Shown one piece after another: positions 670-43,430 of a DNA stretch of 64,000 nucleotides. Below the pieces are notes generated by a model. It worked only from the letters and a program-made list of their open reading frames with translations, did not search any database and had not been told where the DNA came from. Made by a program: the position numbers and the translations under genes. Position 1 is the stretch's first letter, and every line of letters starts with the position of its first letter. Location: positions 310,001-374,000 of the IMG/VR virus record IMGVR_UViG_3300028840_001395; one strand, 5' to 3'.

Positions 670-684
670 ATAGGCTAGCTACCG
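670..684 (-). promoter_or_regulatory. Candidate late promoter CGGT-N7-CTAT (cggtagctagcctat)
   Basis: Lies 26 nt upstream of ATG 643. The same spaced motif occurs upstream of three virion genes. Confidence 0.55.
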
Positions 685-685
685 C

Positions 686-1414
686 TCACACCTCGATGAC
701 CTTCTTCCAGTCGAACCCAGCGTTCTCCTCCCGCCGGAGATAGCCGAACGGGTTGCAGATGAGCCGAGTCTTGCCGATGGTGAAGTCGTGGGAGTCGTGG
801 GTGTGACCGTAGACCCAGACTTCGGGCTGGGCCTCCCGGATGACCCCCTCCATGTCACAGGTGAAGAAGTAGTTCAAAGGCTCACCCTTGAACCGAGGGT
901 GACTCCCCTTGGGCGTCGGGACGTGATGCGTGACCACGATGTCGTCCGACTGGACAGTTTCCGCGAGAAACTGGCGCGAAGCCTGATTAAGTGCCGGGAA
1001 CCAGTCGGTGAACCCTCCGTTGATGATATGGAAATCATTGAGCCTTACGCGATAGGGGTGAGATTCTGGTTTGTCCTCGAACCAGAGAGTGCAGCCAACA
1101 AATCTCTGACCCTCGATGGTCACCGTGTCGTTCTCAAGGACGTGGAGGTTGGGGAGTTCCTCCTGTGCCCTTTGGAGGATACCAAGGATGCCCCGGCGGG
1201 TCGAGTGATAGAACTCGTGGTTCCCCATCACGTACACGACATGCGGCACCCGCTGACAGAGAAGGGTCAGGCAGTATCCGAGGTTGAAGTGGATACCCAA
1301 GTCCCCGGCAATGACCAGGACATCGGTGCCATCGAGAGGGATCTCATCGCAGAAGTACTTTCCCCGATCATGGTGGAATTCTGCGTGGATATCGCTCACG
1401 ATTTGGACTCTCAT
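686..1414 (-). CDS. Calcineurin-like metallophosphoesterase
   Basis: Motifs SDIH, AGDLG, GNHE, THH and GHTH. Start placed at MRVQ (1414), which follows GAGGAGG. Confidence 0.93.
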   Translation of the reverse strand: MRVQIVSDIHAEFHHDRGKYFCDEIPLDGTDVLVIAGDLGIHFNLGYCLTLLCQRVPHVVYVMGNHEFYHSTRRGILGILQRAQEELPNLHVLENDTVTIEGQRFVGCTLWFEDKPESHPYRVRLNDFHIINGGFTDWFPALNQASRQFLAETVQSDDIVVTHHVPTPKGSHPRFKGEPLNYFFTCDMEGVIREAQPEVWVYGHTHDSHDFTIGKTRLICNPFGYLRREENAGFDWKKVIEV

Positions 1415-1448
1415 GTCGGCCTCCTCGACCATTCTACCCTATCGAGAG

Positions 1449-1463
1449 CAATAAAGCGTCTAT
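1449..1463 (+). promoter_or_regulatory. Degenerate copy of the candidate late promoter (CAAT-N7-CTAT) upstream of the helicase
   Basis: caataaagcgtctat ends 33 nt before ATG 1497, with 2 mismatches to the consensus. Confidence 0.3.
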
Positions 1464-1496
1464 GCTCGGGTATCAGTGAGACTTGAGGAGAGGGCA

Positions 1497-8472: not shown

Positions 8473-8654
8473 CACGCCTCCCCGGAGAAGCGGCCTCGGC
8501 ACGCCTTCTTGTTGGCCTGGTGCTTGCGGTCGCCCATCGTGACCGCCCGTCCGCGCCACTCGGCCAGGGTGCCCCCGGCGGCGAAGTGAGCGGCACGCGC
8601 CCCGCCCCGCTCGACGGAGGTGGCCTTGCTGTTGCCCTGATGCTGCCGTGCCAT
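8472..8654 (-). CDS. Small basic protein (60 aa), first gene of the leftward operon
   Basis: AAGGAG RBS directly downstream of the promoter motif, and TGATG coupling to the next gene. Confidence 0.7.
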   Translation of the reverse strand: MARQHQGNSKATSVERGGARAAHFAAGGTLAEWRGRAVTMGDRKHQANKKACRGRFSGEA

Positions 8655-8673: not shown

Positions 8674-8704
8674 CCTAGACTACTCTGGCCCAGCCCGAAA
8701 TAAG
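8674..8704 (-). promoter_or_regulatory. Leftward promoter-like motif CTTAT-N15-AGTAGTCTAGG
   Basis: One of three copies with identical boxes and spacing, each just upstream of an RBS and start codon. Confidence 0.75.
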
Positions 8705-8739
8705 ACCCTTTCTTTCAAAAAGAATTCGCGCGCGAGGGT

Positions 8740-8770
8740 CTTATCTTGCCCCCCGACAGAGTAGTCTAGG
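8740..8770 (+). promoter_or_regulatory. Rightward promoter-like motif CTTAT-N15-AGTAGTCTAGG
   Basis: Inverted partner of the 8674-8704 copy, 16 nt before ATG 8787. Confidence 0.75.
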
Positions 8771-8786: not shown

Positions 8787-9143
8787 ATGAACGGCATGGT
8801 CATTCACACCGCGAAAGTCGTCACCGAGCTGAAGGGGCTGACCTCCTGTGGCGAGGCCCGCAGGCTCATCGAGCGCGACCTGACCCCCGAGCAGCGGGAG
8901 CGGGTGCTGGCGCAGGAGGCCCGGTGGGAGGACTTCGAGCGCCGCGCCTGGGAGGGCGAGGACGAGGACGACGAGCCCGCCCCCGAGTGCGAGGGCTGCG
9001 ACTGCCCGGACGGGTGCGAGGGCTGCGTGGCGTGGGAGCTGGACGAGAGCATGGACGGCGACCACGAGAGCGGCCTGGCCAGCGCGGGCTTCGGGACGGA
9101 CGAGGACTACGGCTGCTTCGACGGCGGCTGCGACGAGTGGTAG
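8787..9143 (+). CDS. Small, highly acidic, Cys-containing protein
   Basis: 34 of 118 residues are D/E. It has a purine-rich RBS and is the first gene after the promoter motif. Confidence 0.75.
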   Translation: MNGMVIHTAKVVTELKGLTSCGEARRLIERDLTPEQRERVLAQEARWEDFERRAWEGEDEDDEPAPECEGCDCPDGCEGCVAWELDESMDGDHESGLASAGFGTDEDYGCFDGGCDEW

Positions 9144-12060: not shown

Positions 12061-12072
12061 AGCGACCTCCTT

Positions 12073-12234
12073 CTAGTCGGACTTCTGAACGGCCCGAATC
12101 TTCTTCTGGATGGCTTCCTTCTGCTCCGGTGGCAGGCCCGGATTCCGCAGGGCTTCGCGGAGCCGGGCGATGTACTTGCGCTCGTAGGGAGCCCGGATCT
12201 TCTGGCTGATGTCACTGCGTCGGATGAAGGGCAT
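12073..12234 (-). CDS. Small basic protein (53 aa)
   Basis: Below the track cut-off. MPFIRRSDISQKIRAPYERKYIARLREALRNPGLPPEQKEAIQKKIRAVQKSD is TGATG-coupled to the upstream gene and fills the gap. Confidence 0.7.
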   Translation of the reverse strand: MPFIRRSDISQKIRAPYERKYIARLREALRNPGLPPEQKEAIQKKIRAVQKSD

Positions 12235-15200
12235 CAGCACGGCCCCCCGCCCGGATCATCCGGCCCCTCCTCGGGGTACGGAGCGAGCACCACATTCGCC
12301 GGGTTCGGGATCTCCCGGTTGAAGCCCCGGAACATCGGGCGAGCGCCCAGACGGTAACGGTCAGCCGCAGCGAAGCCTTCGCCGTAGCCCGCCGGGGAGA
12401 TGTCACCACCGAGGGTGACACCATCCTCCTGCGTCGTGTCCGTTCCCAGAACCCCGTAGGTCACGATGACCATCTGGATCTCATCACCATCGGTCAACGT
12501 GTAGGATCCACCGATCAGGTCGGCCTCCTCGTAAAAGTTCCGCACCAGGAGCGCCCGGCAGACCAGTGCCCCACCCTTCATCACGGGCTGGAGCGAGTCC
12601 GAGAAGGTCTCGGTCACCCAGTCCACCGGCCCGCCGGGGTGCTGGCCATCGAGCACGTACACGGAGCCACCGCCCCGGAAGAGACGGAAGATGCGGGAGC
12701 CGCCCGTATTCTGTTCCGTCCAGGCCGAGTAGTCCGTGACCGACACGGAGCCATCCGACTGAGCGAAGAGAGCGCCGGGCTCACCGAAGAAGCGGTCATA
12801 CTCATCCCGCTCGACCAAGGGCATGAGCGTCTGGATGGGACGCGGCCCGGTCGGGCTGGCCTTCATCGCAGAGGCGTCATCCCGCAGCGGGTTCTCGCAG
12901 AGGAAGTCCGAGTCCTGGAGCAGGGCACCCAGCGGCAGGCGTTCGGTCATGCCGGTGATGTTGACCTGGCTGGTGCCATCGCCCGCGTTCATCGGACGGT
13001 CAACACCTCCCGAAAGTGGGCTGCTGGAGCGCAGGCTGAAGGGGAACTCGTTGGTCGTATCCGCGAACGGGATGATAGTCTGGAATGGTGAGTTGACCGT
13101 CGGTGGGACGCTCTCAGTGTACCACTTGGTCTCGTAGGTGACCTCGTTGCCCTCGGCACCCGTGGGGACAGCGGCGATCCGAACCTTGTCCGGCTTCTCG
13201 GGGATCGCCAGGCAGTTCTGGCTCAGCGTCGAGTGCCTGTTGATGGCCGAGGCCAGATTGGTCACGGTCTCGTTGAGGTCACCCGTATCGTGAATGACCG
13301 TGATGTCCAAGTACTTCCCATCGAGATCAACGGTGTGTGCCGCCACATCCTGTGGTTGCAGGATCGCAGCCAGGAATGGCATGATCGGCCCAGGGCCAAC
13401 AGGAGCCGCACTGGCGTTGTAGATCCAGTAATCCACTGTATCAGGAGCGACCACTGCAGCCGTCACAATCAATGCCTCATACCCAGGAGGCGGAGGCACG
13501 GTATGATCCTGTGACAACACCACCACATCTCCTGGAAGGACACCGGACAAGGTCTGCGCTGGAAAGGGAACCCCTGTATTTGCTGGGATGGCAGCCACGG
13601 GGATAGATACGGGGACGATGGTGTAACCAGGCACTCCCTGTGGCCAGTCGTAGGCGGTCGGCGTCCAGGTGTTGAACACACCCACTCTGACGATTCCATC
13701 TGTCGGGACATGGCCCTCGAATACGATGTGTTCCAGATCTTCACGGGCGTTGATGATCACAGTGTCCCCGACCGTGACCCCAGAAATCGCCTTGTTAGTG
13801 AAGGTGTAGAATCCCGGTGCGTAGGTGCCCACCAGTTGGGTCGAATCCTTGATGAACGACTGAATCGAAGTGGTGTCGATGTCCCAGACATCCTCCTCGG
13901 GAATGCCCAGGCCAGCCGGAGGAGCGTCAGTGAGCTTGGACTTGTAGGCAGCCTGTGCCCCGTAGAGATCGACGTAGGTGCCATCCAGCAACCCGAAGCG
14001 ACAGAACACGTAGTTCTCATCGTCCGGATTCAAGGTGTCCACACCCCCCTGCACGAACAGAGTCAACTCGGCCCGTGAGTCGTTGGTCTTCTGCCCTTCG
14101 GTGAAGGCCCGTGTCTTGATGCGCCAGGCAGGCTGGTCATCCGAAGAGGGCTGCCGCAGCGCCGCCGGAGGCTTGTTGCAGGTGAAGCCCACATCGAGCG
14201 GAGTGCCAGGGAACAGCTCTCCGCCGATCTTGCCCGTCCCCAACGTCGTGTAGAAGTCCATGCTGGCCAGAACCTCGAAGCCACGGGCGTTCGGGGTCTG
14301 CGGGATGTACTCGCCATCGAAGTACTGCTGGATGGGCGTCTCCATCGCGTACTGGCCCGAGATCGGCACCTGACCATAGCGGTGCTCGTAGTCCGACGCC
14401 ACCGTGACTTCGCCACCCCGCGTCATGTAGGGGTCGCCCTGGTACACGGTACGGTTGAAGTCGTTGTAGAGCTGATCGTTGTACCCCGCCGGACACGGGA
14501 TGCAGAGATGGATACCTTCGAGTTCCTCTTCATCCGAGTCGTCGTGGGGATCTCCCGAACCGTCGTGCCAGCGCACGAGCACGTAGTTGTTCTGGTCGAT
14601 CCAGCCCTTGGCGAAACCGAAGATGCAGCACTCGACCACGTAGTCGAGATCCTCGAAGGTCTCACCATCCGTGTAGTGCGTCGAGCGCGTCAGGTCGAGG
14701 ATGTTGGACGGCACGATGTAGGTGTGGTCACCCTCACTCTCCGTCATGGAGTCACTGCACAGATCCTTGGCCCCGTCCTGCAAGATGAACAGCGTCTGCT
14801 GGTCGGCATCCTCACGGATGAGGTTCGGAGCCGAATCAGAGAGCATCTCCCAGCGATTCCCCTGGAAGGTACGCCCACCGAAGGTGTCCCAGTCCCGCTT
14901 GTCATAGACCCCGTAGAGCCGGGCGATGCCCAGGTACGGCGGAAGCTGAATGCCCTTGAGACCGCGCCCCAGGTCGGAGGAGTTGACCGCGTTGAGCGCC
15001 TCGATCACCTCGTCCGCGTAGAGCACGGTGTCATCGATGTCCGTGGTCTTGCGGGCCTTGTAGTAGGGCAGGTTGTTCCACGCGGCGACGAAGGTACCCG
15101 ACCCACCGTAGTTGGACGGGGTGTCAGTCGTGAAGTACATCGAGTAGACGCCCGGCGACGGGCTCCCGTTGTTGTCCGAGCCACCGATGATGTGGAAAAC

Positions 15201-28498: not shown

Positions 28499-28540
28499 AT
28501 CTGCTCTCCAGCGAGTCCTGTTCCCTACTCTTGCTCCATC

Positions 28541-28555
28541 ATAGGCGATTTACCG
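28541..28555 (-). promoter_or_regulatory. Candidate late promoter CGGT-N7-CTAT (cggtaaatcgcctat)
   Basis: Lies 42 nt upstream of ATG 28498. Confidence 0.55.
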
Positions 28556-31600: not shown

Positions 31601-34039
31601 CACCGACAGTGCGCCGACCAGGTAGAGATGCTGATCGTTGTGGAAGCCGAACCCGACTCCAGTGAACACACCGTCAGGAGAGAGGTTCTCTTCCTCGACA
31701 TGGAATCGAGCGACCATGCTGATCGAGGCCGGGAAGGTCAGGTCTTCCAGCCTGTAATACTCGGCCACCTGGGGGTCGTCGGGGTCGAAGGAACCACTCT
31801 GGAGATCGATGACGGTGTAGGTGCCCTCGTTGATGTTGACCTGGCCCGTATCCGTCCCCAGAAGCTCCCAGACGGGCGAACTCGCTATGGGGGTCTGTGT
31901 GCCCTCATAGGAGACAGCATAGCCCGCCAGCGCCCTCTCAAAGCCCTCCTGCTGCCCTGCGTGGGGACTCTGGTTCATCAGGAGCGTCGTGGGGCTGTTC
32001 AGGAGTGCGGAGTACTCCCTCTCGAAGCCCATGTAGCGGTGCCCGATGAGCTTGGGCTGAGGCCGACTGATCGGCCCCATGACGAGACCCATCGGGAACC
32101 GGGCCGTATCCGCTGCCCCCAGTCCAGCATCTGTGTCACCGTGCCAGGCCGGGTCGTGGTGCCCTCGGGCTCGGTTCCACTTGTTGAACACCAGGCCCAG
32201 CGTGTTGAGGCCCTCCATCACCATGATGGGGGTGTTCATCCACTTGTAGTCGAGCGACACGTCGAAGTCAGGGGTGCCCGGTGGCATCAGTGGGATGGGA
32301 ATGGCGGTCTTGATCTCCCCGATGTAGGGATTGACCGATGCAACCTCGACCGGGACTCCATTGACCTCGACCGTCACGTCCTGGTCTGTCGCGGGAGTCG
32401 CATCACCCCAGCCCTTGACCAGCGGCCCCCGCTTGGTCAACACCGAGTCATTGGCCAGCGAGGGGTCACCGATGAAGGATGACCCGGCGTTGTGCATGAA
32501 GTTCCAGGCTGCCGAGAACACGGTCTTGGTCGCCGTGTAGGAGATACCCCGGACGGTGAAACCCTCGACACTGAACGCCTCGTCGTAAAAGAACCAAGAA
32601 GCCCCACCATCACCCATCGAGGGCTGGTCGAAGAGAGCCTCGGCCCCCGAGGTGAGGGGAAGCTCGTTGAACAGGATGGCGTAGATGCCACCCTTGCGGT
32701 TCCTGACCACCGATACGGTGTTGGTGCCTGTGCTCCACTCGACGTTGAGCGTCGTATCGAAGGTTCCACACTGGATGCGAAGCTGATCAGCTCCGAGATT
32801 CTGCTGGAACGTGATGTCCACCTGGACACCCATGCCAGGCGGGCCACTCTGCACCCGGAACACCCCGACGTGAGGGTTCGGGAAAGATGAGAGCGGCGGA
32901 ACGTACTGGGTCGTCTCGGCGTTGAACGTGAAGTCCACCCGGAAGCTCGCCGGGTCGAGGGACGCCTTGCCCGTCGTATCCCAGAATCCCCAGCCGTAGG
33001 GTTCGTTGGCGACCTTGGACATCCACAGGTAGTTCGACACGATCTGCGATGTGCCGTTGGCCGGGAAGATCTCGATGCCGTCGAAGGTCGGGTCATCGCT
33101 CGGGAGCACAGAGCCGTCGTAGCTGATGGCTGTCGCAGGAGAGATGCTGGTTGCATAGTCCAGGGAGGTCATCCCCGTGACCTGCATGTGGACTTGATGC
33201 GGATCCCCACCATAGGGGTGCGTCACCGTCACGGGCGTGATGTCGATGGGGTAGTCCGGCGTCGGGGTGAACCCGTAGGACTCGGGGGCCAGGATGCCGT
33301 AGAGGTTCCCGACCGGCTCCTCTGCCTCGGGGAGCATGGCATGGAGGAAACTGAAGATCAGTTCATCCCCACTGATGGGGTAGACCACATAGGGCGGAGG
33401 CTCACCCTTGGTGTAGAGCGTCACCGGCACGTTGAGGATGGGGTTGCCCGAGATGTCGGTCGGCCCAGAGCAGTTGATCTGGTAGGTGCCACCCAGCATC
33501 GTTCCCGTGTGGGTGAGGATGACCGATGTAACCCCCCGCAGGTAGTCTCCGACCGAGATGCCCAGCGAGCCCATATCCCCGATATCGACGCGGGTGACCA
33601 CCGAGGGGCCACCGATGAGCGGTGTCAACGTGTAGCTGGCCGGGTCGGTCAGTGCGGGGTTGTTCGGGTCCATCGGCTCGGAGAAGAAGACCTCGATCTC
33701 CCAGCCGTTGAGGCTCAAGGCTGAGAGCATCCGGGGTGGGATGTGCTCGATAGACCCGTAGGGGCCTGTCCCGAAGGCGTCGCCGCCGTAGCCGCCGTCC
33801 ACCTCGATGTCGGGAGCCGGGAACATCCGACTGCCGTAGGAGGCCATCCCGTAGGGACTTCCTACAGGAGAAGTCCCCTGCCCGCCTCCGGGAACCCATC
33901 CCACGCCGCCGTAGCCAGAACCTTCGGGGTAGGAAGGGCAATCGTAGACCGCCTCCTGTCCCGGAGGGGGGAACGGCCCAGACCCGAACACGCTCCACTG
34001 GTAGCACTCGCTCGGGTCAGTATCAGGAGTCCAGCCCAA
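28637..34039 (-). CDS. Large virion structural protein (about 1800 aa) with probable Ig-like and lectin-like beta-sandwich domains
   Basis: Long acidic, beta-rich ORF with an Ig-like IEVFFSEPMD..TDPASYTL..TDISGN segment and a LamG-like WDDGEFHTYRVV..VTLYID segment. The TTG start is uncertain. Confidence 0.75.
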   Translation of the reverse strand: MGWTPDTDPSECYQWSVFGSGPFPPPGQEAVYDCPSYPEGSGYGGVGWVPGGGQGTSPVGSPYGMASYGSRMFPAPDIEVDGGYGGDAFGTGPYGSIEHIPPRMLSALSLNGWEIEVFFSEPMDPNNPALTDPASYTLTPLIGGPSVVTRVDIGDMGSLGISVGDYLRGVTSVILTHTGTMLGGTYQINCSGPTDISGNPILNVPVTLYTKGEPPPYVVYPISGDELIFSFLHAMLPEAEEPVGNLYGILAPESYGFTPTPDYPIDITPVTVTHPYGGDPHQVHMQVTGMTSLDYATSISPATAISYDGSVLPSDDPTFDGIEIFPANGTSQIVSNYLWMSKVANEPYGWGFWDTTGKASLDPASFRVDFTFNAETTQYVPPLSSFPNPHVGVFRVQSGPPGMGVQVDITFQQNLGADQLRIQCGTFDTTLNVEWSTGTNTVSVVRNRKGGIYAILFNELPLTSGAEALFDQPSMGDGGASWFFYDEAFSVEGFTVRGISYTATKTVFSAAWNFMHNAGSSFIGDPSLANDSVLTKRGPLVKGWGDATPATDQDVTVEVNGVPVEVASVNPYIGEIKTAIPIPLMPPGTPDFDVSLDYKWMNTPIMVMEGLNTLGLVFNKWNRARGHHDPAWHGDTDAGLGAADTARFPMGLVMGPISRPQPKLIGHRYMGFEREYSALLNSPTTLLMNQSPHAGQQEGFERALAGYAVSYEGTQTPIASSPVWELLGTDTGQVNINEGTYTVIDLQSGSFDPDDPQVAEYYRLEDLTFPASISMVARFHVEEENLSPDGVFTGVGFGFHNDQHLYLVGALSVNGLQHVGMLLDARYIHNVESWELGSKTTGTIEDSTTLIVNTAEAPQDLADGDRFQILEGTQAGVYTAEHVVAQCDGTTTITVSPAFPADPKLFGNTYPEVIFETQWQGTASSYRFVVDPDTQRIQLTMSGLTTATLLDLTSTVCTLEEPANTGLNLVIGQGGQFFWGSLSRRGTNQSVWSFTRYAVVPDQTNLRDFALRVYTEMDELPECEEDAELWFITQPFGYSEVDSSGDVLLLKGTTASESLDFSFGYERLEPFFAPDSNFDLRLKFKVESGTLGAGDAEAILNDGQREVRLATLLYVENQPGTSWRQLVDLPVESISGILDPTEQGWEVVSGSDGSRAVQAQDLVVSQSAGETIQFTSHLDKTGLPFSDQGGRIIEARIAVDSWTGDANGNTGIRFHADVGGDHHVGVRLRGGPNSSVQLIDIDDLVVQEYPFEWDDGEFHTYRVVAPLSAVTLYIDDEAQSPPRNLFDFPGNTGQNTCVFGAHNTVSGVTQSLASESRWRSLSYSLRPTDECKRTLGVWRGGDKTDINSWEIPRTDNSSAQNSAQYGPVIEEMDWRDYVDLRVFQTPDWGVTVFRPDLPLPPYYKPETPGVPGTGFATYTTEPSAGWINVEYPDLPRVESNFGKVSWGALNPESVTQQRWDFVRYKLFKPITNDYTAPQHMVLNYSNVITSGEMTKDLLHESVVVTTLDSRRVTLKPAHLFAQSIWKIVDGDTIFTYEMFTLAADGQTITLGQDDEGNDYTFSGDNVPVTIVFIPGKPVTNTYLEAQPLLDSVTLLNEGTPPVPKSQQGTDHWEIATVPDSVGASLGASLGASIGSLDYRILNFTNDPEALYEELDFFEVSSGDEGLLSTMCEGGLPLGESGYSDVGGDPIYSPDGTGPPLGGTGASAGLYETGQTTGSPFGGFLLTLSGSAFWEKPPTPVDELLPTVGGVELPNNYLYASGGNYVGPVVDDTGKVIGQHALGGELNSAVLFKNAPPGSYR

Positions 34040-37254: not shown

Positions 37255-37294
37255 GTGACCCTCCTTCTAGCGCACGCTCTATGTAGTCGGGCCT

Positions 37295-37309
37295 ATACCC
37301 TTACTACCG
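37295..37309 (-). promoter_or_regulatory. Candidate late promoter CGGT-N7-GTAT (cggtagtaagggtat)
   Basis: Lies 40 nt upstream of ATG 37254 and overlaps the upstream stop codon. Confidence 0.45.
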
Positions 37310-38689
37310 GAGGAAAAAGACGGTCGCATCCTCGTCTTCGACCTCCTGGGGCACCTGCACACCCAGCCGGTCAACCACGACCTCGTATTCCTGGCCCGTA
37401 GCGGCCTGGGCCATCCTGCGGCGTACTCGCAGGATGCTGGGTGCCACTCTCACTCTTGTCCCCGGCCCCGGAGCGAACCCCACAGGCCCTCCATCGTTGC
37501 CCAGCACCATCTTCAGCCGGTAACTCCCAGCGTTGGGGCCGTCCGAGAACACCAGAATCTCGCCCTCGACGGCCAAAGCCCAGTTCTGGCTGTCATCCTC
37601 GACCACATCCCCTGTGACCGTCGCCGTCCCAGTCAGCCCAGTCGGGATTGTCGTGTATTCCCGCGCCACTGGGTCAGTCCCAACTGGGAAGGCCAGGATC
37701 TCCTCGACCCGATACCGACCGATGTGTCCCTCATCCGTCGAAGCCGGAGTGCCCTCGATGCCCCCGACATGGATGGAGTTCGGGCCGGACAACACTGTCA
37801 GATAGGCACCTACCTGAACCGATGTGAAGTCCCGATAGGGGTCGCTGAACAGCGTGCGGTCAGTCAGGGTCTCCCCTTCCGTTCCTGCAATTCTCTTGGC
37901 CCCGAGGCAATAACGCCGAAAATCCTCATAGTAGTAGTTCGACCACTCGAAGCTGTAAGACTCCGAAAACAGAGGGCCAAACGCCTCCCTGAACAGGAAT
38001 CGGAAGTCATACAAAGTGTGGGCAGGCTTGAGGGCTCGCAGGACAATCCTGACGTTGTTGACGAGGGTGAACGGGTCGTCGGGGAAGTCCGGCAGGATGA
38101 CAGTGGTTTCGCCCACGGTGAGGGTTCGGGTGTCCTCGACGTTGATCTCGAAGGAGAACTGGTCATCGAAGCCCCAGGCCGAAGTGCCCTTGAGCTTCCG
38201 GTCTTCGATGACCTTCTCGATCACCTCGACCGTGGCGTCGGTGAGAAGCTCAACACCCTCCTTGACGGTCTTCTTGGTGGCTCCCTGGAGCAGCAAGATG
38301 ACCATGCGCTTGAGGAACTGGCGGTAGGAGATGTCACCGTCGATCTCGGGCCAGCCGTCCGTCCGGGCGTCCGGGAACACCAGAGCACCGAGAATCTGGT
38401 AGAGGAACTCCGACCGCGTGTAGTCGTACACCGAGTCGGCATAGACCTCCTGGGCCGAGATCTGGAACTTGGCGATCTGCTCGGCTGCCGCCTGGTAGCG
38501 CAGGGTGTAGAAGGGACCGGGGACATCCGACACGTAGTTGGACGGCAGCAGTTGGAGGAACACCTCCATGATGCGGTCAACCTGACTCCGCTCGGCGTCG
38601 ATGCGATCCTGCGAAGGCTTGTCTACGGGAGCAGGGTTCTGCTCCAGCAGAGAGGGCAGCATCGTCTTGTCAGAAGGCTGGTCTGCCAT
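37304..38689 (-). CDS. Baseplate wedge subunit, P2 gpI-like
   Basis: YRQFL..LLQGAT..GV..LT and LKPAHT motifs, immediately after the J-like gene. Confidence 0.75.
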   Translation of the reverse strand: MADQPSDKTMLPSLLEQNPAPVDKPSQDRIDAERSQVDRIMEVFLQLLPSNYVSDVPGPFYTLRYQAAAEQIAKFQISAQEVYADSVYDYTRSEFLYQILGALVFPDARTDGWPEIDGDISYRQFLKRMVILLLQGATKKTVKEGVELLTDATVEVIEKVIEDRKLKGTSAWGFDDQFSFEINVEDTRTLTVGETTVILPDFPDDPFTLVNNVRIVLRALKPAHTLYDFRFLFREAFGPLFSESYSFEWSNYYYEDFRRYCLGAKRIAGTEGETLTDRTLFSDPYRDFTSVQVGAYLTVLSGPNSIHVGGIEGTPASTDEGHIGRYRVEEILAFPVGTDPVAREYTTIPTGLTGTATVTGDVVEDDSQNWALAVEGEILVFSDGPNAGSYRLKMVLGNDGGPVGFAPGPGTRVRVAPSILRVRRRMAQAATGQEYEVVVDRLGVQVPQEVEDEDATVFFLR

Positions 38690-41600
38690 CAGACTCTCCG
38701 ATTCCCTCCGGTCAGCAGCCGCGCCCGGTCTTCGTCCTCATCGTAGCTGAAGTCCAGATCGCCAAGCTCCAGGAACTCGGTCGGACCCGGCTCGATGTTC
38801 TTCACACCCTCGTCTCCGTACACGACGTAGGTGGCCGTGTAGTCGTAGTTCTCGGGAGTGTCACCCTTGGCTAGCGACACCAGAATCCGCCGCTGGGTGA
38901 TCTCCTTCCGCTTGTCATCGATCTCGGCATCCGTGGCGAACGGATACTGCTCCTTGAGCGTCGTGTCGTCACTGTATCCGGGGATGAACAGACCGTCGTT
39001 GCCGATGATGAATGCCCGCCCCGCTGCGTTCTTGATGGGGATGCCATTGAGGTTGGGCGGGTCGTTGTAGATGATGAGAGGTTCCTCGCTGGCGAAAACC
39101 CCACGCGGGTCGTTGATCTCGCCCCCACCGTTGACCGTGCCCGACTCCAACGGATTGACCAGCAGATACACGTCCACCAACTCGGTAGACCAGTCCGATA
39201 TCAAGGAGAAGTCGATGTCCTCGTCCGTGGTCACTTCCTCCCGGATGACCAGGGAACCGTCCGTCTTGGCCAACCTGACCAGCGGAACCACGGTGTAGGA
39301 CACTCCAGCCACCGTCTCGATCACATCGATCACGTCACTCTGCCGGACAGGCTCACCCAGCACCAGCGACCCGAAGAACCGAGCCAGTGCCGTCCGCACC
39401 GCGCTGTCCACCGTCGAGGCCGTCTGGTTGGGCTGAAGAACGAGGGTGCCCCAGATGTCCACCCCGACCGGAGCAGCCTCCTTGGTCAACACGTCTGCCG
39501 TGACGTGGCGGGTGTCATCCAGGTCATCCTGCACCACTCCGACCAGGGAGTTGTAGGTGTAGGTGACCACGAAGTTCTCGTCATGCTGGTAGTCCACCAG
39601 CACCGTCTGGCCTTCCACGATGCGAGAGCTGGCTGTCGGAAGGATGCCCAGTGGAGTGCCTTCCGACTCATCTACGAAGGTGAAATCGGGAGCCACGTTC
39701 GGCTCGTAGGGGCCATAGTACTCGATGGTGCGCTCGTCGTTGTACACCCGGACGGTGATGGGATTGATGCCGAGATTGTTCAGGTATTCGGCCCCATCGA
39801 GGATGACGTGCTCCTCGTTCTCGACCGGGATGGGGTCACCAGAAGGAACAGTCACCGGAGCCGAACCATCTGTGGGCTGGATGACCTGTACGTAGTCTCC
39901 GGCCTCGTTCGAGCGCCCCATGTCGAGGGGCAGGCTGCCAGGGAACAGCTTGTAGGTCGAATCGAGCAGCGTTCCCGACACGGTGCCGGTGAACTCGGTG
40001 ACCTCCCGGACGGGCTGCCGGGTCATCACGTAGCGGTCGCTCGTCCGGAAGCGGTAGGAACCCGTGAACACGTCCGTCAGGAAGATGTTGGTCGGGTCGT
40101 TGTAGGTCGATGAAAGCTGAATCCCGTCCGGCGGGATGATGGTCACATCGGTCAGGTCGAACACCTTGCCCGTGGTGATGTCCTTGAACTCGAAGCCCCA
40201 GTCGGGATTGTCCAGCATCTCGATGATGGGGTTGGAATCGTTGATATCCGCATTGATGGCCCGGAACTTCAGGTTGCGGATGTCCCCCACGGGCTCGAAC
40301 TGACCGTCCTCCACGATCTCGAAGGAGAAGGCAAAGGCATCGGTGACGTTGGAGAGGTTCTCTCCACGAATCCACACGTCCACCTTGCCGCCCACATGCT
40401 CCCCGGTCGCGGGGTCGCGGTCACGCTGCATCAGGACGTTGCCCGCGTCCACCACGATAGTCTGGAGCACGCCCGGCACATCGATGGCATTCTGGATGTA
40501 GCCCTGGTAGGTGCCAGAGTCCACCGAGGCCAGCACGCGGTCAGCCCGAGCCGCCAGGTCGCGGTTGCTCTCGACATCCCGGCCACCGAAGGTTGCCCCC
40601 TCGTTGACCACCTGGACGCCCGCCGGGCCGCTGATGATGCTCGTGATCTGCCCCGCAGCGAGGTTACCCGCCAGGCCCGGCTGCTCGGCCTGGATGAAGG
40701 CTCGGGCCGAGAAGCGTCCCGTCTGGGGGTTGTAGGTGGTCTGTGCTCCGCTGGACGTGATCTGGGCCGCCGAAGTCGTGCGGAAACGGACGCTGCCGCC
40801 TCCGGTGATGGTGCCGATGGGCATGAAGCGGGTCGTGTCGGGCCGTCTGGTCGTGTAGAAGGTGACTTCGCCCCGAGACTGGGTGCCGGGGCGACGGGTG
40901 ATACCCCGCCTGGCAGCAAGCTGGTCAAACATGTTGTCGATGAGATTCTGCACATCACCGTTCGTCTGAAGGAAGAACGCCTGCTTGATGGCCAGCTTGT
41001 AGGGAGACTGCTCGACCGGGATGCTTGACCCCGAAAAACCGGGGTCATCGATCACCAGGAGGGTGGCGAAGGACTGGGCTGCTTGCATGAAGTTGACGAT
41101 GAAGCGGACACGCTCCGCCTCGGTCGAGAACGGGTCGATGTAGGTGTCCCGCTGGACAGAACCAGGCTTCACGTCAAGCTCAGGGTGCGTCCTGAAAATG
41201 GAGCGCACCGTGTCCCGCACGATCTGCTGCCGACTCACGGTGGGCAGGGCCGAGATGCCGGGGGTCACCGTCAGCGGACTGGCAGCAACCTCGGGCGAGA
41301 AGGCCGACTCATACTCCTGATCCTCGATGAGATACACCGCCGTCGCCACGTAGTAGAGCGGGTCTTCGTCCGGCAACGCATTGAACTCGGAGTTCGGCAG
41401 GGCCGGATAGGGTGTCGAGGTCGGCGTGGCCACACGGTCATGGGTGAAGGAGAACTGCTGGGTCAGCCGGATCGAGTCCACGTTCACGACGGTCTTGACC
41501 CGTGTGACGGTCTCGGGCACTTCGACTACCTGGTCGAAGTCTGTCTGGATGATGTTGCCAAGCTGGTCGGTCTGCTGACCGACGTAGCGCAGGTAGAGCG

Positions 41601-42210
41601 GGTCGGCTGCGGGACTGCCATCCTCATTGGTGGCGATGAGGTCATCCACGGTCAACTGGCCCAAGGAGTCGGTGTCCTCAATGGTCTCACTGGAGATGAC
41701 CATCGTGGGGTTGATGCGCTTGAACCCTGTGGTGCCCCCACCGGGGTCTGTGGCAGCGTAGAAGTGGTAGCCGACGACGTTCTGATCCTCGATACCCTCG
41801 ACGGTGATCGTGACCACCCTGTCCTTCCGCTCCACGAAGATGCCGGAAGGGGCGATGACGCCCGCCTTGATATCCCGCTCCAGGGAGAGTTCGGCCTGCA
41901 CACGACCAGAGGCCGTGACCTCCCCATTGGTCAGAATCGACCGCACCTCGATGATGTTGTCGCCGGGGAACAGTTGCAGGCCCTCGGGATAGGCCGAAGG
42001 GTTGGGGACGGTGAAGGTCTCACCCTCGAACACGATGCTGTCCGGGTCAGAGGTGAATCCGCTGCCCCTGATGGATACCTGCATGTCTGCCGTGTCGGGC
42101 GACATGACACCCCGGAAGAATCGGGTCGAGATGTCCGTGGTGAAGATGTATTCCGCGCGCAGCACCCCATCGGGTCCCATGAAGCGGGGAGTCTTGCTCG
42201 CTGTCGCCAT
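38689..42210 (-). CDS. Baseplate J-like wedge protein (enlarged, 1173 aa)
   Basis: DVKPGSVQRD, GITRRPG..GEVTF, AEQPGLAGNLAAGQI, GGRDVESNRDL, GKVDVWI and LGEPVRQSDVI..VAGV. Confidence 0.88.
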   Translation of the reverse strand: MATASKTPRFMGPDGVLRAEYIFTTDISTRFFRGVMSPDTADMQVSIRGSGFTSDPDSIVFEGETFTVPNPSAYPEGLQLFPGDNIIEVRSILTNGEVTASGRVQAELSLERDIKAGVIAPSGIFVERKDRVVTITVEGIEDQNVVGYHFYAATDPGGGTTGFKRINPTMVISSETIEDTDSLGQLTVDDLIATNEDGSPAADPLYLRYVGQQTDQLGNIIQTDFDQVVEVPETVTRVKTVVNVDSIRLTQQFSFTHDRVATPTSTPYPALPNSEFNALPDEDPLYYVATAVYLIEDQEYESAFSPEVAASPLTVTPGISALPTVSRQQIVRDTVRSIFRTHPELDVKPGSVQRDTYIDPFSTEAERVRFIVNFMQAAQSFATLLVIDDPGFSGSSIPVEQSPYKLAIKQAFFLQTNGDVQNLIDNMFDQLAARRGITRRPGTQSRGEVTFYTTRRPDTTRFMPIGTITGGGSVRFRTTSAAQITSSGAQTTYNPQTGRFSARAFIQAEQPGLAGNLAAGQITSIISGPAGVQVVNEGATFGGRDVESNRDLAARADRVLASVDSGTYQGYIQNAIDVPGVLQTIVVDAGNVLMQRDRDPATGEHVGGKVDVWIRGENLSNVTDAFAFSFEIVEDGQFEPVGDIRNLKFRAINADINDSNPIIEMLDNPDWGFEFKDITTGKVFDLTDVTIIPPDGIQLSSTYNDPTNIFLTDVFTGSYRFRTSDRYVMTRQPVREVTEFTGTVSGTLLDSTYKLFPGSLPLDMGRSNEAGDYVQVIQPTDGSAPVTVPSGDPIPVENEEHVILDGAEYLNNLGINPITVRVYNDERTIEYYGPYEPNVAPDFTFVDESEGTPLGILPTASSRIVEGQTVLVDYQHDENFVVTYTYNSLVGVVQDDLDDTRHVTADVLTKEAAPVGVDIWGTLVLQPNQTASTVDSAVRTALARFFGSLVLGEPVRQSDVIDVIETVAGVSYTVVPLVRLAKTDGSLVIREEVTTDEDIDFSLISDWSTELVDVYLLVNPLESGTVNGGGEINDPRGVFASEEPLIIYNDPPNLNGIPIKNAAGRAFIIGNDGLFIPGYSDDTTLKEQYPFATDAEIDDKRKEITQRRILVSLAKGDTPENYDYTATYVVYGDEGVKNIEPGPTEFLELGDLDFSYDEDEDRARLLTGGNRRV

Positions 42211-42211
42211 A

Positions 42212-43390
42212 TTAGCTCCCGTCGTTTAGCAGAAGCCGAGCACCGTTCGGGACATTGATCCGGCTCTGGCCAAGTCCGGCGGCCTCCGTCCCGAGCATGA
42301 GGCCATTCGACCCCATCAGGGCCACCACATCGGGCACCGTGAACACGATTGTCAGCTCGATGGGTTCCCCCGAGGCGTTCTGCACTGTCAGGTCGATCAT
42401 GTAGGTCGTCGGATCTTCCTCATGAGGATAGACATCCACCGACACAATCGAGTAGAGGCGCTCCTTGAAAGTGACTTTCTGGTACTTGGCCTGGTCCTCC
42501 TGCAAGCTCTGGTAGCGACCCAACGCCTGGCGAACATCATCGCTCAAGACGGAAGCCACTCCAGCCAGCGCCTTCTGGCCAATACGGGACCGGAGAGTTG
42601 TCCCATACCAGGCGTGGTATGGGTTGCTCCCCTGGTCGGTCAAGAGGATCTTCAGGGCCGCCTGATAGAGCAGGTTCTCATCTTGGATGAGCAGGGACTT
42701 GCCATCAGGAGAGAAGCGGAAGTCGTTCTCGATATAGGTGGCCTTGCAGCGGAGACAACGGTTCACCGGCACCGAGTAGGTCACCTTGAACATCGGGTTG
42801 CCCCGGACAGCCTGGATGAACTGCGGGAAGCGGTTGGTGATGGTGTCCGGCCTCTGGGCCAACACCCAGCCAGGATAGATCATCTTGCCCTGGGCTCGAT
42901 ACTGATAGCCCACCGTCGCACAAGGTCCGGCCCCGAACCCCAGCGTGGCAGCCATCGTGCCGCCCACCTGGACATAGGAGTCGGTGCCCACCGTCGAGGT
43001 GTCACTGAACAAGAGGTGGCCGTTCGAGTTCTCGGCCAGTACTACCGAGAGATTCTGCTGGAGCATCGCCTTGATGATCTGGTCAGTCGTCATCCGCTGG
43101 GTGCCTGTGACCCCGAAGGAAAAGGTCTCAGACCCCCGAGGAGATGTGATTGTCAGGGTGTCCTCGTTCTCGGTAACGTCGTAAGGCCCCGAGATAGATG
43201 AGAAAATCCGACCGACCGAGTATAGCCCCGCCTGGGGGATGAAGACCTCGTTGTTGACGAGGATACGGACTGTTCCCGCACCAGCCACGGGTTGCCGGGT
43301 CGGAAGAGAGCGCCGGTTGCTCCCCAGGTTGACCACTTCCTCCATCGTCATGTGAGGACAGGGCCAAGCTAGCTGAAAGTCCTGCGACAC
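42212..43390 (-). CDS. Baseplate wedge/sheath-initiator gp25 (GPW)-like protein with N-terminal extension
   Basis: C-terminal LYQAALKILLTDQGSNPYHAWYGTTL. It precedes the J-like gene and has a GTG start after GAGGTG. Confidence 0.8.
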   Translation of the reverse strand: MSQDFQLAWPCPHMTMEEVVNLGSNRRSLPTRQPVAGAGTVRILVNNEVFIPQAGLYSVGRIFSSISGPYDVTENEDTLTITSPRGSETFSFGVTGTQRMTTDQIIKAMLQQNLSVVLAENSNGHLLFSDTSTVGTDSYVQVGGTMAATLGFGAGPCATVGYQYRAQGKMIYPGWVLAQRPDTITNRFPQFIQAVRGNPMFKVTYSVPVNRCLRCKATYIENDFRFSPDGKSLLIQDENLLYQAALKILLTDQGSNPYHAWYGTTLRSRIGQKALAGVASVLSDDVRQALGRYQSLQEDQAKYQKVTFKERLYSIVSVDVYPHEEDPTTYMIDLTVQNASGEPIELTIVFTVPDVVALMGSNGLMLGTEAAGLGQSRINVPNGARLLLNDGS

Positions 43391-43415
43391 TACGTCACCT
43401 CATTGAAGGAACCGT

Positions 43416-43430
43416 ATAGCCTAGACACCG
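43416..43430 (-). promoter_or_regulatory. Candidate late promoter CGGT-N7-CTAT (cggtgtctaggctat)
   Basis: Lies 25 nt upstream of GTG 43390. Confidence 0.55.

What the first reader, a model, noticed from the sequence alone, without database searches (positions are those of the whole stretch)
670..43430. Second motif CGGT-N7-(C/G)TAT upstream of virion/lysis-type genes: candidate late promoter
Seen: four sense-strand copies (670-684, 28541-28555, 37295-37309, 43416-43430), each 25-42 nt upstream of a start codon. Three of them occupy the only sizeable intergenic gaps I found in the 52-kb late module. Known: large phages such as T4, SPO1 and phiKZ use short non-sigma70 late promoters read by phage-encoded factors. 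Inference: this is a lineage-specific late promoter that, with the CTTAT motif, outlines a two-class transcription programme. The motif is short, so a few chance hits are expected, and I did not scan all coding sequence.
Basis: partly seen in the sequence, partly recalled or inferred. Interest (0 to 1): 0.62.

Follow-up and report, generated by a model that had tools for sequence, protein, structure and literature searches.

The report
Clade-wide non-early promoter of huge phages
The four motif copies are real members of a ~35-nt promoter-like signal that heads replication and virion gene blocks in a 436-kb uncultivated phage and is conserved across its relatives, so it is more than chance but not strictly a "late, virion-only" promoter.

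Summary
All four copies are at the stated coordinates on the coding (-) strand, 25-42 nt from a start codon. Three of them fill the only real gaps in the long tail-gene array.

- **Statistics.** The window count alone is not significant. In the whole 435.8-kb phage genome, 15 of 18 strict matches lie in sense orientation just upstream of genes (0.66 expected; p about 2.5e-18).
- **True element.** It is larger and looser than written: C(G/A)nTAG-N5-yCTAT, then 13 or 14 nt, then (G)TAG(G/A)A. About 35-39 copies exist.
- **Conservation.** The element is footprinted upstream of orthologous genes in at least 16 relatives (42-65% GC). It is equally enriched genome-wide in two independently analysed relatives.
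- **What it heads.** It precedes the baseplate, sheath, portal and terminase blocks. It also precedes helicase, DnaB and DNA-polymerase operons, so it is "non-early" and not strictly "late".
- **Other classes.** The CTTAT motif is the upstream half of a second rigid class (58 copies, metabolism and anti-defence genes). A third, host sigma70-like class also exists.
- **Likely mechanism (inferred).** Host RNA polymerase is redirected by phage-encoded sigma-type proteins. Transcription starts and timing are unmeasured.

The parts
650..684 (-). Class-2 element, site 1: core 684->670 (CGGTAGCTAGCCTAT). An SD-like box TGGAGG lies at 655-650, 14 nt after TAT. Start codons are GTG 646 / ATG 643. It heads the 252-aa and 181-aa genes, a 541-aa DNA helicase and a DnaB-like helicase, which lie leftward beyond the window.
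28522..28555 (-). Class-2 element, site 2: core 28555->28541 (CGGTAAATCGCCTAT). The box GTAGGGA lies at 28528-28522, with TAG beginning 13 nt after TAT. A separate SD GGAGA lies at 28509-28505 and the start is ATG 28498. A G+C hairpin with a short T tail lies just upstream (about 28590-28561).
   Evidence: conserved upstream of the orthologous gene in at least 16 relatives
37276..37309 (-). Class-2 element, site 3: core 37309->37295 (CGGTAGTAAGGGTAT). The box TAGAGC lies at 37281-37276, the SD AGGAGG follows, and the start is ATG 37254 (1067-aa protein). The tandem stop codons TAG-TAA of the upstream gene (37306-37301) lie inside the core.
   Evidence: the core is 15/15 identical in relative L119 while the flanks differ
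43397..43430 (-). Class-2 element, site 4: core 43430->43416 (CGGTGTCTAGGCTAT). An SD-like box TGAGGT lies at 43402-43397 and the start is GTG 43390. The gene it serves is gp25/sheath-initiator-like (392 aa) and is followed by a Baseplate_J-like gene (38689-42210).
   Evidence: conserved in relatives L120-L123, weaker in L124
8674..8708 (-). Class-1 promoter ('CTTAT class'), - strand copy: GGGTCTTATTT at 8708-8698 and GAGTAGTCTAGG at 8685-8674, with ATG at 8654. Included for contrast; it is not part of class 2.
8736..8770 (+). Class-1 promoter, + strand copy of the divergent pair: GGGTCTTAT at 8736-8744 and GAGTAGTCTAGG at 8759-8770, with ATG at 8787.
1431..1438 (-). Class-3 (host sigma70-like, extended -10 type) element GGTAGAAT. 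It lies upstream of the metallophosphatase gene, whose likely start is ATG 1414 with AGGAGG before it.

Best explanation
The four copies belong to one class ('class 2') of phage-specific promoters in a complete 436-kb uncultivated phage. The element has two blocks. The first is a 15-bp, partly palindromic core, C(G/A)nTAG-N5-yCTAT. The second is a -10-like box, (G)TAG(G/A)A, that starts 13 or 14 nt after the core. The centre of the core lies 21-22 nt upstream of the T of TAG, which is the place a -35 element holds in a sigma70-family promoter. The other abundant class (class 1, CTTAY then about 16 nt then GTAG) has the same geometry with a different upstream block. Inferred mechanism: host RNA polymerase first transcribes early genes from a small set of ordinary sigma70-like promoters. 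These early genes include a 382-aa sigma-factor-like protein and a 201-aa protein carrying a sigma region-4 (-35-reading) domain. These phage proteins then direct the polymerase to class-1 and class-2 promoters, and the class-2 core is read by a sigma4-type helix-turn-helix. The 201-aa protein is the favoured reader, because both it and the core are nearly invariant across the clade. Class 2 switches on the conserved core genes of the phage, replication as well as virion and lysis genes, after the early phase. Shown: existence, architecture, placement, orientation, clade-wide conservation, gene content and the presence of sigma-type proteins. Inferred: promoter activity itself, the transcription start, the timing, and which protein reads which class.
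For: Placement and orientation: 15 of 18 strict hits, and 35 of 39 PWM hits, are intergenic and in sense orientation. For 31 of 37 sites the TAT-to-start distance is 25-45 nt. Independent replication with a PWM trained only on this genome: in relative G002 (536 kb, 52% GC) 35 of 42 hits are intergenic and 26 are sense-upstream (p = 4e-20); in G001, 15 of 17 and 14 (p = 1e-19). Footprint across 18 orthologous promoters at 42-65% GC: information content is 1.20 bits in the core and 0.72 in the box, against 0.16-0.30 in flank, spacer and leader. Sites 3 and 4 are also conserved. The PWM is specific: 10 hits in 195 kb of relatives' DNA, 8 of them at the orthologous position. The core-to-box spacing is fixed at 13 nt in 24 sites and 14 nt in 10. 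The TAG start is shared with class 1 (GAGTAGTCT) and class 3 (GGTAGNAT). Gene content: class-2 units hold 25 of 28 proteins of 800 aa or more, plus baseplate, sheath, portal, terminase, protease, holin-like, DNA polymerase A, DnaB-like and helicase genes. Class-1 units hold nucleotide metabolism, ligase, methylase, ArdC and RNA-repair genes. Class-2 genes are more often conserved in G002 (45% against 29%). Candidate readers: the 382-aa protein aligns to the sigma70-ECF model over regions 2-4. Its model's 50 best fold matches are all sigma factors, and its sigma4 domain fits at 1.9 A over 75 residues. Both this genome and G002 put a near-canonical TTGACT / TAnnGT promoter in front of it. The 201-aa protein has sigma4-type domains fitting at 0.8-1.9 A. 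It ranks 3rd of 169 orthologue pairs in identity, 71% against a median of 47%, and belongs to a family of 1,450 clusters on huge-phage contigs. No cellular-type RNA polymerase subunit, sigma54 protein or known RNA family was found.
Against: There are no transcript data of any kind, because all public runs holding the phage are DNA metagenomes. Promoter activity, start site and timing are therefore unproven. The box lacks the final T that defines a sigma70 -10 hexamer. In all 9 short-leader sites the box is Shine-Dalgarno-like, against 8 of 28 long-leader sites (Fisher p = 2e-4). That suggests the box is transcribed, which would put the start upstream of where a classical -10 reading puts it; my start-codon calls do use an RBS term, which biases this test. 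About 8-10 sites have leader hairpins that would need a start right after CTAT. Assigning the 201-aa protein to class 2 rests only on parallel conservation. The 382-aa sigma assignment rests on weak HMM scores (E = 4e-4) and on Z-scores (up to 9.7) that helical proteins can reach by chance. Gene calls and transcription units come from a crude home-made caller, and units in long arrays may hide unrecognised promoters. Divergent phage RNA polymerases could escape Pfam, and the T7-type search had silent controls.
Confidence: 0.6

Rival explanations
1. Compact promoter for an unidentified phage RNA polymerase. The 15-bp core alone is the promoter and transcription starts a few bases after CTAT, as T7-like promoters end in TATA just before +1. 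The C-rich tract and the TAG/GGAG box would then be 5'-leader features (anti-SD, SD, leader hairpins).
For: In short-leader sites the box is always SD-like (9 of 9), so it is probably in the mRNA. About 8-10 sites have strong hairpins pairing the C-rich tract with the SD (z below about -2.5), which needs a start right after CTAT. Some cores look T7-like (GGCTATAGGG at 154692). Conservation across 42-65% GC relatives suggests a phage-borne reader.
Against: No T7-type or multisubunit polymerase gene was detected, although the T7 search was uninformative, and the 3,931-aa protein has no sequence match in the PDB. Leader folding is only slightly above background overall (mean z -1.00 against -0.67). 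In long-leader sites and in relatives the box is GTAGAAC- or GTAGAGA-like, is not an SD, keeps a fixed 13-14 nt distance from the core, and has a separate SD further down. That is hard to explain as a mere leader feature.
Confidence: 0.15
2. Operator, not promoter. The partly palindromic core (TAG-N5-CTA) is the binding site of a phage helix-turn-helix regulator that only modulates (represses or boosts) transcription reading through from upstream or starting at a separate weak promoter.
For: Core positions 4/14, 5/13 and 6/12 are complementary in 35, 24 and 21 of 37 sites. Sites 1, 3 and 4 sit inside co-directional arrays with no terminator before them, so read-through is likely. In 6 of 6 genomes a copy lies directly after the gene of the conserved sigma4-like DNA-binding protein.
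Against: The element is strictly oriented with the downstream gene and is tied to a -10-like box at fixed spacing. It also occurs in divergent intergenic regions where no upstream transcription on that strand exists (63574, 78294/78321, 416787/416981), so those genes would otherwise lack a promoter. A symmetric operator would not need one orientation.
Confidence: 0.12
3. RNA-level signal: a conserved 5'-leader or inter-cistronic RNA motif, such as a processing site, a translational operator or a ribosome-loading signal.
For: It lies 25-45 nt before start codons, some leaders fold, and some copies lie within long polycistronic arrays.
Against: No Rfam family matches. There is no consistent structure across sites. 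Conservation is block-wise in primary sequence with a non-conserved spacer of fixed length, which is typical of protein-DNA recognition. It also occurs at the heads of divergent units.
Confidence: 0.05
4. Chance occurrence of a short degenerate pattern in AT-richer intergenic DNA.
For: The window count alone is not significant, and the genome-wide total of 18 is not far from composition expectation (about 7.6 inside genes, plus 0.66 in upstream zones).
Against: 0 of 400 composition-matched shuffles of the upstream regions reach the observed 15. The element replicates in two other genomes. It is conserved at orthologous positions across relatives of very different GC content.
Confidence: 0.01

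Closest known systems
Phage T4 middle promoters (MotA box near -30 plus a sigma70 -10 element; MotA/AsiA 'sigma appropriation'). From established knowledge; AsiA is also covered in PMC7824862.
   Same: A phage-specific block sits at the -35 position in place of the host -35 hexamer and is combined with a -10-like element at fixed spacing. It switches on a post-early gene class that includes replication genes, and early genes encode the factors.
   Different: The sequences are unrelated. The box here lacks the T at the last -10 position. The upstream block is a 15-bp partial palindrome. No MotA or AsiA homologue was sought or found. The candidate readers are sigma-type proteins, not a MotA-type activator.
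Bacillus phage SPO1 cascade: host sigmaA for early genes, phage sigma gp28 for middle, gp33/34 for late, each with its own -35/-10 pair (established knowledge).
   Same: Several promoter classes with different upstream blocks are read by host core polymerase with successive phage-encoded sigma-type proteins. Some cores here begin CGTTAGA-like, recalling the SPO1 late -35 block.
   Different: The spacing differs: here 22-23 nt separate the CGGTAG block from the TAG box, with CTAT in between. The -10 parts are unrelated. The resemblance is recalled from memory and was not tested.
'Minimal' single-HTH sigma factors and gp33-like factors of RNA-polymerase-less jumbo phages (Iyer et al. 2021, PMC7824862), and T4 late transcription (gp55 + gp33 + clamp; PMC2988020).
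   Same: The phage appears to lack its own polymerase but encodes small proteins with a sigma4-type HTH. The 201-aa gene lies beside a clamp-loader-like gene in all contigs examined.
   Different: T4 late promoters are a lone TATAAATA at -10. Here there is a large upstream block. No gp55 or gp33 homology was shown, and binding to the beta-flap or to the clamp was not tested.
Late promoters of jumbo phages that have their own multisubunit polymerases: phiKZ T(-3)ATG(+1) and AR9 A(-11)ACA-N6-TA/G(+1) (PMC7598289).
   Same: They are lineage-specific, non-sigma70 signals upstream of late genes in very large phages.
   Different: Those signals are very short, overlap the start site and, according to that review, cannot be found bioinformatically. 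This one is long, information-rich and easy to find. No beta or beta' homologue was detected here.
Sigma54 -24/-12 promoters (TGGCAC-N5-TTGC).
   Same: There are two blocks one helical turn apart (GG ... 10 nt ... CTAT), with the next conserved feature about 12 nt further on.
   Different: The invariant GC of the -12 block is replaced by TAT. The phage has no sigma54 DNA-binding domain and no sigma54-activator AAA+ domain.

Membership tests
Sigma70-family bipartite promoter (-35 / -10) | Two conserved blocks whose geometry matches -35 centre to -10 start, about 20.5 nt | tested here: met
   Core centre (position 8 of 15) to the T of TAG is 21 nt in 24 sites and 22 nt in 10. For class 1, the CTTAT centre to the T of TAG is 20 nt (arithmetic on those coordinates).
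Sigma70-family bipartite promoter (-35 / -10) | -10 hexamer of type TAnnnT with conserved A(-11) and T(-7) | tested here: not met
   The box is TAG(G/A)(A/G)N. The last position is G, C or A in most sites (TAGGAG, TAGAAC, TAGAGC). T and A at the first two positions are kept.
Sigma70-family bipartite promoter (-35 / -10) | Transcription starts about 7 nt after the -10 hexamer and depends on a sigma factor | not testable with these tools
   No RNA runs hold the phage. The indirect hints conflict.
Temporal 'late' promoter class of a lytic phage | Found upstream of virion and lysis genes | tested here: met
   Copies head the blocks containing gp25-like and Baseplate_J (window), sheath (third gene after site 398871), portal, terminase and protease (block led by site 26332), a gene with an endolysin-like domain (site 225583) and a holin-like gene.
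Temporal 'late' promoter class of a lytic phage | Restricted to late functions and absent from replication genes | tested here: not met
   Window site 1 heads a helicase/DnaB-like operon. DNA polymerase A is the second gene after a weak site. RecA, RNR and topoisomerase lie in class-2-assigned units.
Temporal 'late' promoter class of a lytic phage | Transcripts appear late in infection | not testable with these tools
   The phage is uncultivated and only DNA metagenomes hold it.
phiKZ / AR9-type nvRNAP late promoters | Consensus TATG at the start site (phiKZ) or AACA-N6-TA/G (AR9), and split beta/beta' genes in the genome | tested here: not met
   The consensus sequences differ. There are no Rpb2_6 or Rpb1_2 matches while the controls responded. 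Very divergent subunits cannot be excluded.
T7-like single-subunit RNAP promoter | A contiguous block of about 20 nt ending just before +1, and a T7-type polymerase gene | tested here: inconclusive
   A 15-nt contiguous core ending in TAT is compatible. The PF00940 search found nothing, but its controls were silent too. The fixed downstream box argues against.
Sigma54 -24/-12 promoter | GG at -24 and GC at -12, plus sigma54 and a bEBP activator | tested here: not met
   GG is present, but the second block is CTAT, not TTGC. There is no Sigma54_DBD or Sigma54_activat match in the phage. Host sigma54 was not assessable.
Known structured RNA family (Rfam) | A match at gathering score | tested here: not met
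   There are 0 matches in the 64-kb window.

The most novel reading that the evidence does not exclude
A 'split sigma' system shared by a very large clade of uncultivated huge phages. In this reading a free-standing 201-aa sigma4-type protein acts as a detachable -35 reader for the invariant 15-bp core. That protein is the third most conserved protein between two clade members and has about 1,450 sequence clusters in metagenomes. A fast-evolving phage sigma (or the host sigma) would supply -10 recognition. One conserved protein-DNA code would then control the core replication and virion genes of hundreds of giant phages, whatever their host or base composition.
Probability: 0.25. Interest if true: 0.7.

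Novelty: new member of a known kind. Interest (0 to 1): 0.5.

Why it matters
Huge phages known only from metagenomes have mostly unannotatable genes and no expression data. A long, information-rich promoter signal that is conserved across relatives from 42% to 65% GC gives a purely computational way to split such genomes into transcription units and regulatory classes. It flags which unknown giant proteins belong with the core replication and virion programme. It also nominates specific, highly conserved sigma-type proteins as the regulators. These predictions can be tested in vitro with purified proteins and synthetic templates, without culturing the phage. This contrasts with phiKZ-type jumbo phages, whose middle and late promoters cannot be predicted from sequence (PMC7598289).

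Tried and rejected
- **Expression data.** The look-up of sequencing runs returned only DNA metagenomes kept as contigs (sediment, seawater). Read laying was therefore not used and no start sites could be mapped.
- **Exact 14-mer of the class-1 promoter in viral contigs.** It gave 62 scattered single hits, as expected by chance, so it was uninformative.
- **Fixed regex in relatives.** My first pattern had one N too many (6 hits). I use it only as an off-by-one control. The correct regex gave 14 hits against 9 in the reversed control, which is too blunt, so I replaced it with gene-aware PWM analysis of the full genomes.
- **Hallmark Pfams (sheath_1, Terminase_6C, HK97 capsid).** They found nothing. 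PHROGs later located the sheath, portal, terminase and protease. The major capsid protein was not identified.
- **171-aa protein with a sigma region-4.2 match.** Rejected as a clade-wide reader, because it has no homologue in six relatives, including the complete one.
- **Leader-hairpin idea.** Real in a subset of sites, but overall barely above background, so it is not a defining feature.
- **Terminator followed by promoter.** The scan shows no terminator excess in window 26-45 kb. Only site 2 has an obvious upstream hairpin.
- **Sigma54 reading.** Rejected (and the sequence itself).
- **TAG recoding linked to the amber-suppressor-type tRNA.** TAG is an ordinary stop (178 of 499 genes) with no excess of back-up stops.
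- **Depletion of the strict motif inside genes.** 3 observed against 7.6 expected, p about 0.06. This is marginal and no claim is made.
- **Replication versus virion sub-classes of class 2.** No sequence difference was visible between copies heading replication genes and copies heading virion genes (inspection).

Full report
**Setting.** The window is bases 310001-374000 of a single 435,804-bp contig with 62% GC. The tools identify it as a complete virus record with direct terminal repeats. Public runs that hold it are sediment and seawater DNA metagenomes. It is therefore an uncultivated 'huge' phage. Nearly all long ORFs in the window lie on the - strand.

**Observation.** The pattern CGGT-N7-STAT occurs exactly four times in the window, at the reported coordinates and all on the - strand. 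The sequence shows each copy ending 23-42 nt before a start codon that has a Shine-Dalgarno sequence. The array from about 11.4 to 63.9 kb has only three true intergenic gaps (138, 49 and 53 nt), and these hold sites 2, 3 and 4. An apparent 173-nt gap at 12061-12233 is a small ORF whose ATG overlaps the preceding TGA. Counting alone proves nothing: 4 observed against 1.97 expected, and 17 of 100 shuffles reach 4.

**Genome-wide test.** I called genes with a simple codon-model caller (499 genes, 92% coding). The genome has 18 strict matches. Fifteen lie in or abut intergenic DNA (7.6% of the genome) in the sense orientation of the next gene, 3-81 nt before its called start. Dinucleotide shuffles of the same 212 upstream regions give 0.66 +/- 0.82 matches, and none of 400 reaches 15. 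The binomial probability is 2.5e-18. The three matches inside genes lack the downstream block and look like chance. Inside genes the motif is, if anything, slightly rare (3 against 7.6; p about 0.06).

**True extent of the element.** Aligning the sites showed a second conserved block. In 13 of 15 sites a T(A/G)(A/G) triplet, mostly TAG, begins 13 or 14 nt after TAT. One-mismatch variants that share this block are also gene-proximal. An iterated two-block weight matrix finds 39 sites at 16 bits or more, 35 of them intergenic. The core is partly palindromic, TAG-N5-CTA, with positions 4/14 complementary in 35 of 37 sites.

**Other promoter classes.** Unbiased k-mer enrichment in upstream regions is dominated by a different signal. 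This is a rigid 46-nt element, GGkCTTAyyT ... GAGTAGTCTAGG, with 58 copies. Its CTTA-to-GAGTAG distance is 19 nt in 51 of 57 CTTA occurrences, and copies often form divergent pairs. The window has one such pair at 8674-8770. Among regions with neither class, a third type recurs: GGTA(G/T)NAT, an extended -10-like signal (19 sense-upstream copies against 1.8 expected; p = 2e-15). Some copies have near-canonical -35 hexamers. One copy lies in the window at 1431-1438. The programme therefore has at least three promoter types, and all three begin their -10-like part with TA(G/T).

**Conservation.** The 219-aa protein served by site 2 has 25 relatives in IMG/VR at 40-75% identity. In at least 16 of them, with locus GC from 42% to 65%, the same two-block element sits just upstream of the orthologue.
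- Across 18 such promoters the information content is 1.20 bits per position in the core and 0.72 in the box. It is 0.19, 0.30 and 0.16 in the upstream flank, spacer and leader.
- In 195 kb of relatives' DNA the matrix gives only 10 hits at 18 bits or more. Nine are on the gene strand and 8 are at the orthologous position.
- Site 3 is identical in its core in a relative whose flanks differ. Site 4 is kept in five relatives.
- I then fetched two relatives in full and repeated the gene-aware analysis with the matrix trained only on this genome. In G002 (536 kb, complete, 52% GC), 35 of 42 hits are intergenic and 26 are sense-upstream within 120 nt (p = 4e-20). In G001 (223 kb), the figures are 15 of 17 and 14 (p = 1e-19).
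- Class 1 is conserved in architecture but not in sequence. In G002, CTTAy-N14-16-GTAG occurs 115 times upstream against 9.7 expected, in the form GACTTACTTTC ... GCGTAGATAGG.

**What the element precedes.** I assigned each gene to the nearest upstream promoter on its strand. This is crude for long arrays.
- Class 2 has 187 genes (median 230 aa), including 25 of the 28 proteins of 800 aa or more. Class 1 has 221 genes (median 156 aa) and one such protein.
- Class-1 genes carry nucleotide-metabolism, ligase, RNase HII, UDG, methylase, ArdC, RNA-repair, Macro and PARP domains.
- In the window, class-2 genes include a gp25-like protein (weak) and a Baseplate_J protein directly after site 4, a weak VgrG-type hit, and a holin-like protein.
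- Elsewhere, the tail sheath is the third gene after site 398871. Terminase, portal and head protease lie in the block led by site 26332. A protein with an endolysin-type domain follows site 225583.
However, window site 1 heads 252-aa and 181-aa genes, a 541-aa DNA helicase and a DnaB-like helicase. DNA polymerase A is the second gene after a weak site. RecA, RNR, topoisomerase IB and SNF2/RecD2 helicases fall in class-2 units.
- I saw no sequence difference between copies heading replication genes and copies heading virion genes. Class-2 genes are also the conserved core: 45% have a reciprocal best hit in G002, against 29% for class 1.
- 'Non-early, core-gene' describes the class better than 'late'.

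**Geometry and mechanism.** The centre of the 15-bp core lies 21-22 nt upstream of the T of TAG. The centre of CTTAT in class 1 lies 20 nt upstream. The sigma70 standard is 20.5 nt (-35 centre to -12). Both classes therefore look like sigma70-family promoters in which different blocks hold the -35 position. The box, however, lacks the last T of a -10 hexamer.

*No phage polymerase was found.* There were no matches to Rpb2_6 or Rpb1_2, and the controls responded. The T7-type search was uninformative because its controls were silent. No sigma54 parts were found.

*Sigma-type proteins are present.*
- The 382-aa protein at 63762-64910 aligns weakly to the sigma70-ECF model across regions 2-4 (E = 4e-4) and has 45 homologues on huge-phage contigs.
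- Its AlphaFold model (pLDDT 85) has sigma factors as all 50 best fold matches (best E = 0.012). Z-scores reach 9.7 over residues 136-382, and the sigma4 domain fits at 1.9 A over 75 residues. Helical folds can reach such Z by chance, so I treat the assignment as probable.
- In both G000 and G002 this gene is preceded by a near-canonical promoter, GGTTGACTT then 15 nt then (TGg)TATTGT or gGTAAAGT. It is therefore likely an early gene read by host polymerase.
- A second protein is 201 aa when read from the start codon that its homologues use. It has sigma4-type HTH domains that fit -35-binding domains of SigF, SigR, SigD and SigC at 0.8-1.9 A.
- That protein ranks 3rd of 169 orthologue pairs between G000 and G002 (71% identity against a median of 47%), whereas the 382-aa protein ranks 125th (40%). 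This parallels the motifs: the class-2 core is invariant, and class 1 has drifted.
- The 201-aa family has 1,450 clusters, many on contigs of 100-536 kb. In six of six genomes examined a class-2 element lies directly after this gene's stop codon.
- From this I infer a cascade, but have not shown it. Host sigma reads class 3, which makes the phage sigma-type proteins. These direct the host polymerase to classes 1 and 2. The 201-aa protein is the favoured reader of the class-2 core. The literature describes RNA-polymerase-less jumbo phages with full and 'minimal' single-HTH sigma factors (PMC7824862).

**Unresolved: the start site.**
- In the nine sites where the box is 6-9 nt from the start codon, the box is always SD-like. 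Among long-leader sites this holds for 8 of 28 (Fisher p = 2e-4).
- Either those mRNAs are leaderless, or the box is transcribed and the start lies further upstream than a -10 reading implies.
- In class 1 the SD also begins only 5 nt after TAGTCT.
- About 8-10 class-2 leaders can form strong hairpins between the C-rich spacer and the SD. As a group they are little different from ordinary upstream regions (mean z -1.00 against -0.67).
- These points keep alive a rival in which the core alone is a compact promoter for an unrecognised polymerase.
- Other rivals are less likely. An operator-only role is argued against by the strict orientation and by copies that head divergent units. An RNA motif is argued against by the lack of Rfam matches and of consistent structure. 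Chance is excluded.

**Comparison with known systems.**
- Published jumbo-phage late promoters are very short and overlap the start site: phiKZ T(-3)ATG(+1) and AR9 AACA-N6-TA/G. They are read by phage polymerases (PMC7598289). This element is neither.
- T4 late promoters are a lone -10 block (PMC2988020).
- The nearest functional analogues are T4 middle promoters and the SPO1 sigma cascade (from established knowledge). The sequences are unrelated.
- The huge-phage survey (PMC7162821) reports sigma70 and AsiA-like genes but no promoter motifs. I found no prior description of this element in the searchable library.

**Verdict.** The element is a real, clade-wide, promoter-like signal. The interpretation as a lineage-specific non-host promoter class is reasonable. 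The labels 'late' and 'virion/lysis' are too narrow, and the motif definition and the two-class scheme need correction. It is a new member of a known kind of system.

**Limitations.**
- There are no transcript data.
- Gene calls and transcription units are home-made.
- The matrix was trained on this genome, so the enrichment figures for G000 are partly circular. The strict-regex test and the two replicate genomes are not.
- Reader assignment is by correlation only.

Noticed in passing
genome-wide; window 8674-8708 (-) and 8736-8770 (+): The dominant promoter-like element ('class 1') is GGkCTTAyyT, about 9 nt, then cAGAGTAGTCTAGGtg. It has 58 copies with rigid spacing, often in divergent pairs, and lies upstream of nucleotide-metabolism, DNA-repair and anti-defence genes. 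Its counterpart in relative G002 keeps CTTAy ... GTAG but differs elsewhere, with about 115 copies.
   Followed up: yes
window 1431-1438 (-); genome-wide about 19-34 copies: A third, sigma70-like promoter type is GGTA(G/T)NAT (extended -10 style), sometimes with a TTGACT-like -35. It precedes both sigma-type genes and the window's metallophosphatase gene, so these are probably the host-polymerase early promoters.
   Followed up: partly
genome 241943-242033 (-) (L002:1907-1997): A 91-nt tRNA has anticodon CTA (amber-suppressor type; ARAGORN labels it 'Pyl'). Yet TAG is an ordinary stop codon in this phage (178 of 499 genes) with no excess of back-up stops. Its role is unexplained.
   Followed up: partly
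genome 85.2-89.1 kb, 108.1-122.9 kb, 409.7-413.0 kb: ARAGORN predicts about 70 tRNA genes in three clusters. That is at or above the maximum of 67 reported for complete huge-phage genomes in PMC7162821.
   Followed up: no
class-2 leaders, e.g. genome 168001, 387934, 435169, 280801, 269278, 180492, 284190, 1178: In about 8-10 class-2 sites the C-rich spacer after CTAT pairs with the G-rich box or SD in a strong hairpin (z from about -2.7 to -6). This would mask the ribosome-binding site if it is transcribed. It is not a general feature of the class.
   Followed up: partly
window 37301-37309 (-): The upstream gene (37304-38689) ends in tandem stops TAG-TAA that lie inside the core of site 3. Coding sequence and the regulatory element therefore overlap there.
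   Followed up: no
window 47527-59322 (-), plus 12234-18587, 28637-34039 and others: There is a run of giant ORFs (3,931, 2,117, 1,800, 1,199, 1,173, 1,084 and 1,067 aa) in the tail/baseplate array. Apart from Baseplate_J in the 1,173-aa ORF, none has a Pfam match, and the largest (too long for the Pfam scan) has no PDB sequence match. 25 of the genome's 28 proteins of 800 aa or more lie in class-2 units.
   Followed up: partly
window 27006-27839 (-); also L004:1192-1884 (+) = genome 386814-387506: Homing-endonuclease-like genes (a ROS/MucR-type zinc finger plus endonuclease PHROGs, and an HNH type with an HTH) are inserted among structural genes.
   Followed up: no
genome 31416-32021 (-) and neighbours; L171-L173: Gene order is conserved around the sigma4-like gene: phage metallopeptidase, clamp-loader-like AAA+ (DNA_pol3_delta2), a protein of about 180 aa with a weak NusG hit in one contig, the sigma4-like protein, a class-2 site, then a gene of about 103 aa. 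The closeness to clamp-loader genes recalls the clamp dependence of T4 late transcription, but this was not tested.
   Followed up: partly
genome 2891-3766 (-): A 291-aa protein is 92% identical between G000 and G002, far above the median of 47% and above every other orthologue pair. It is either under extreme constraint or was recently exchanged. It was not annotated.
   Followed up: no
window 12075-12233 (-): An unlisted small ORF of about 52 aa fills the apparent gap between the 2,117-aa gene and the holin-like gene. Its ATG overlaps the preceding TGA.
   Followed up: partly
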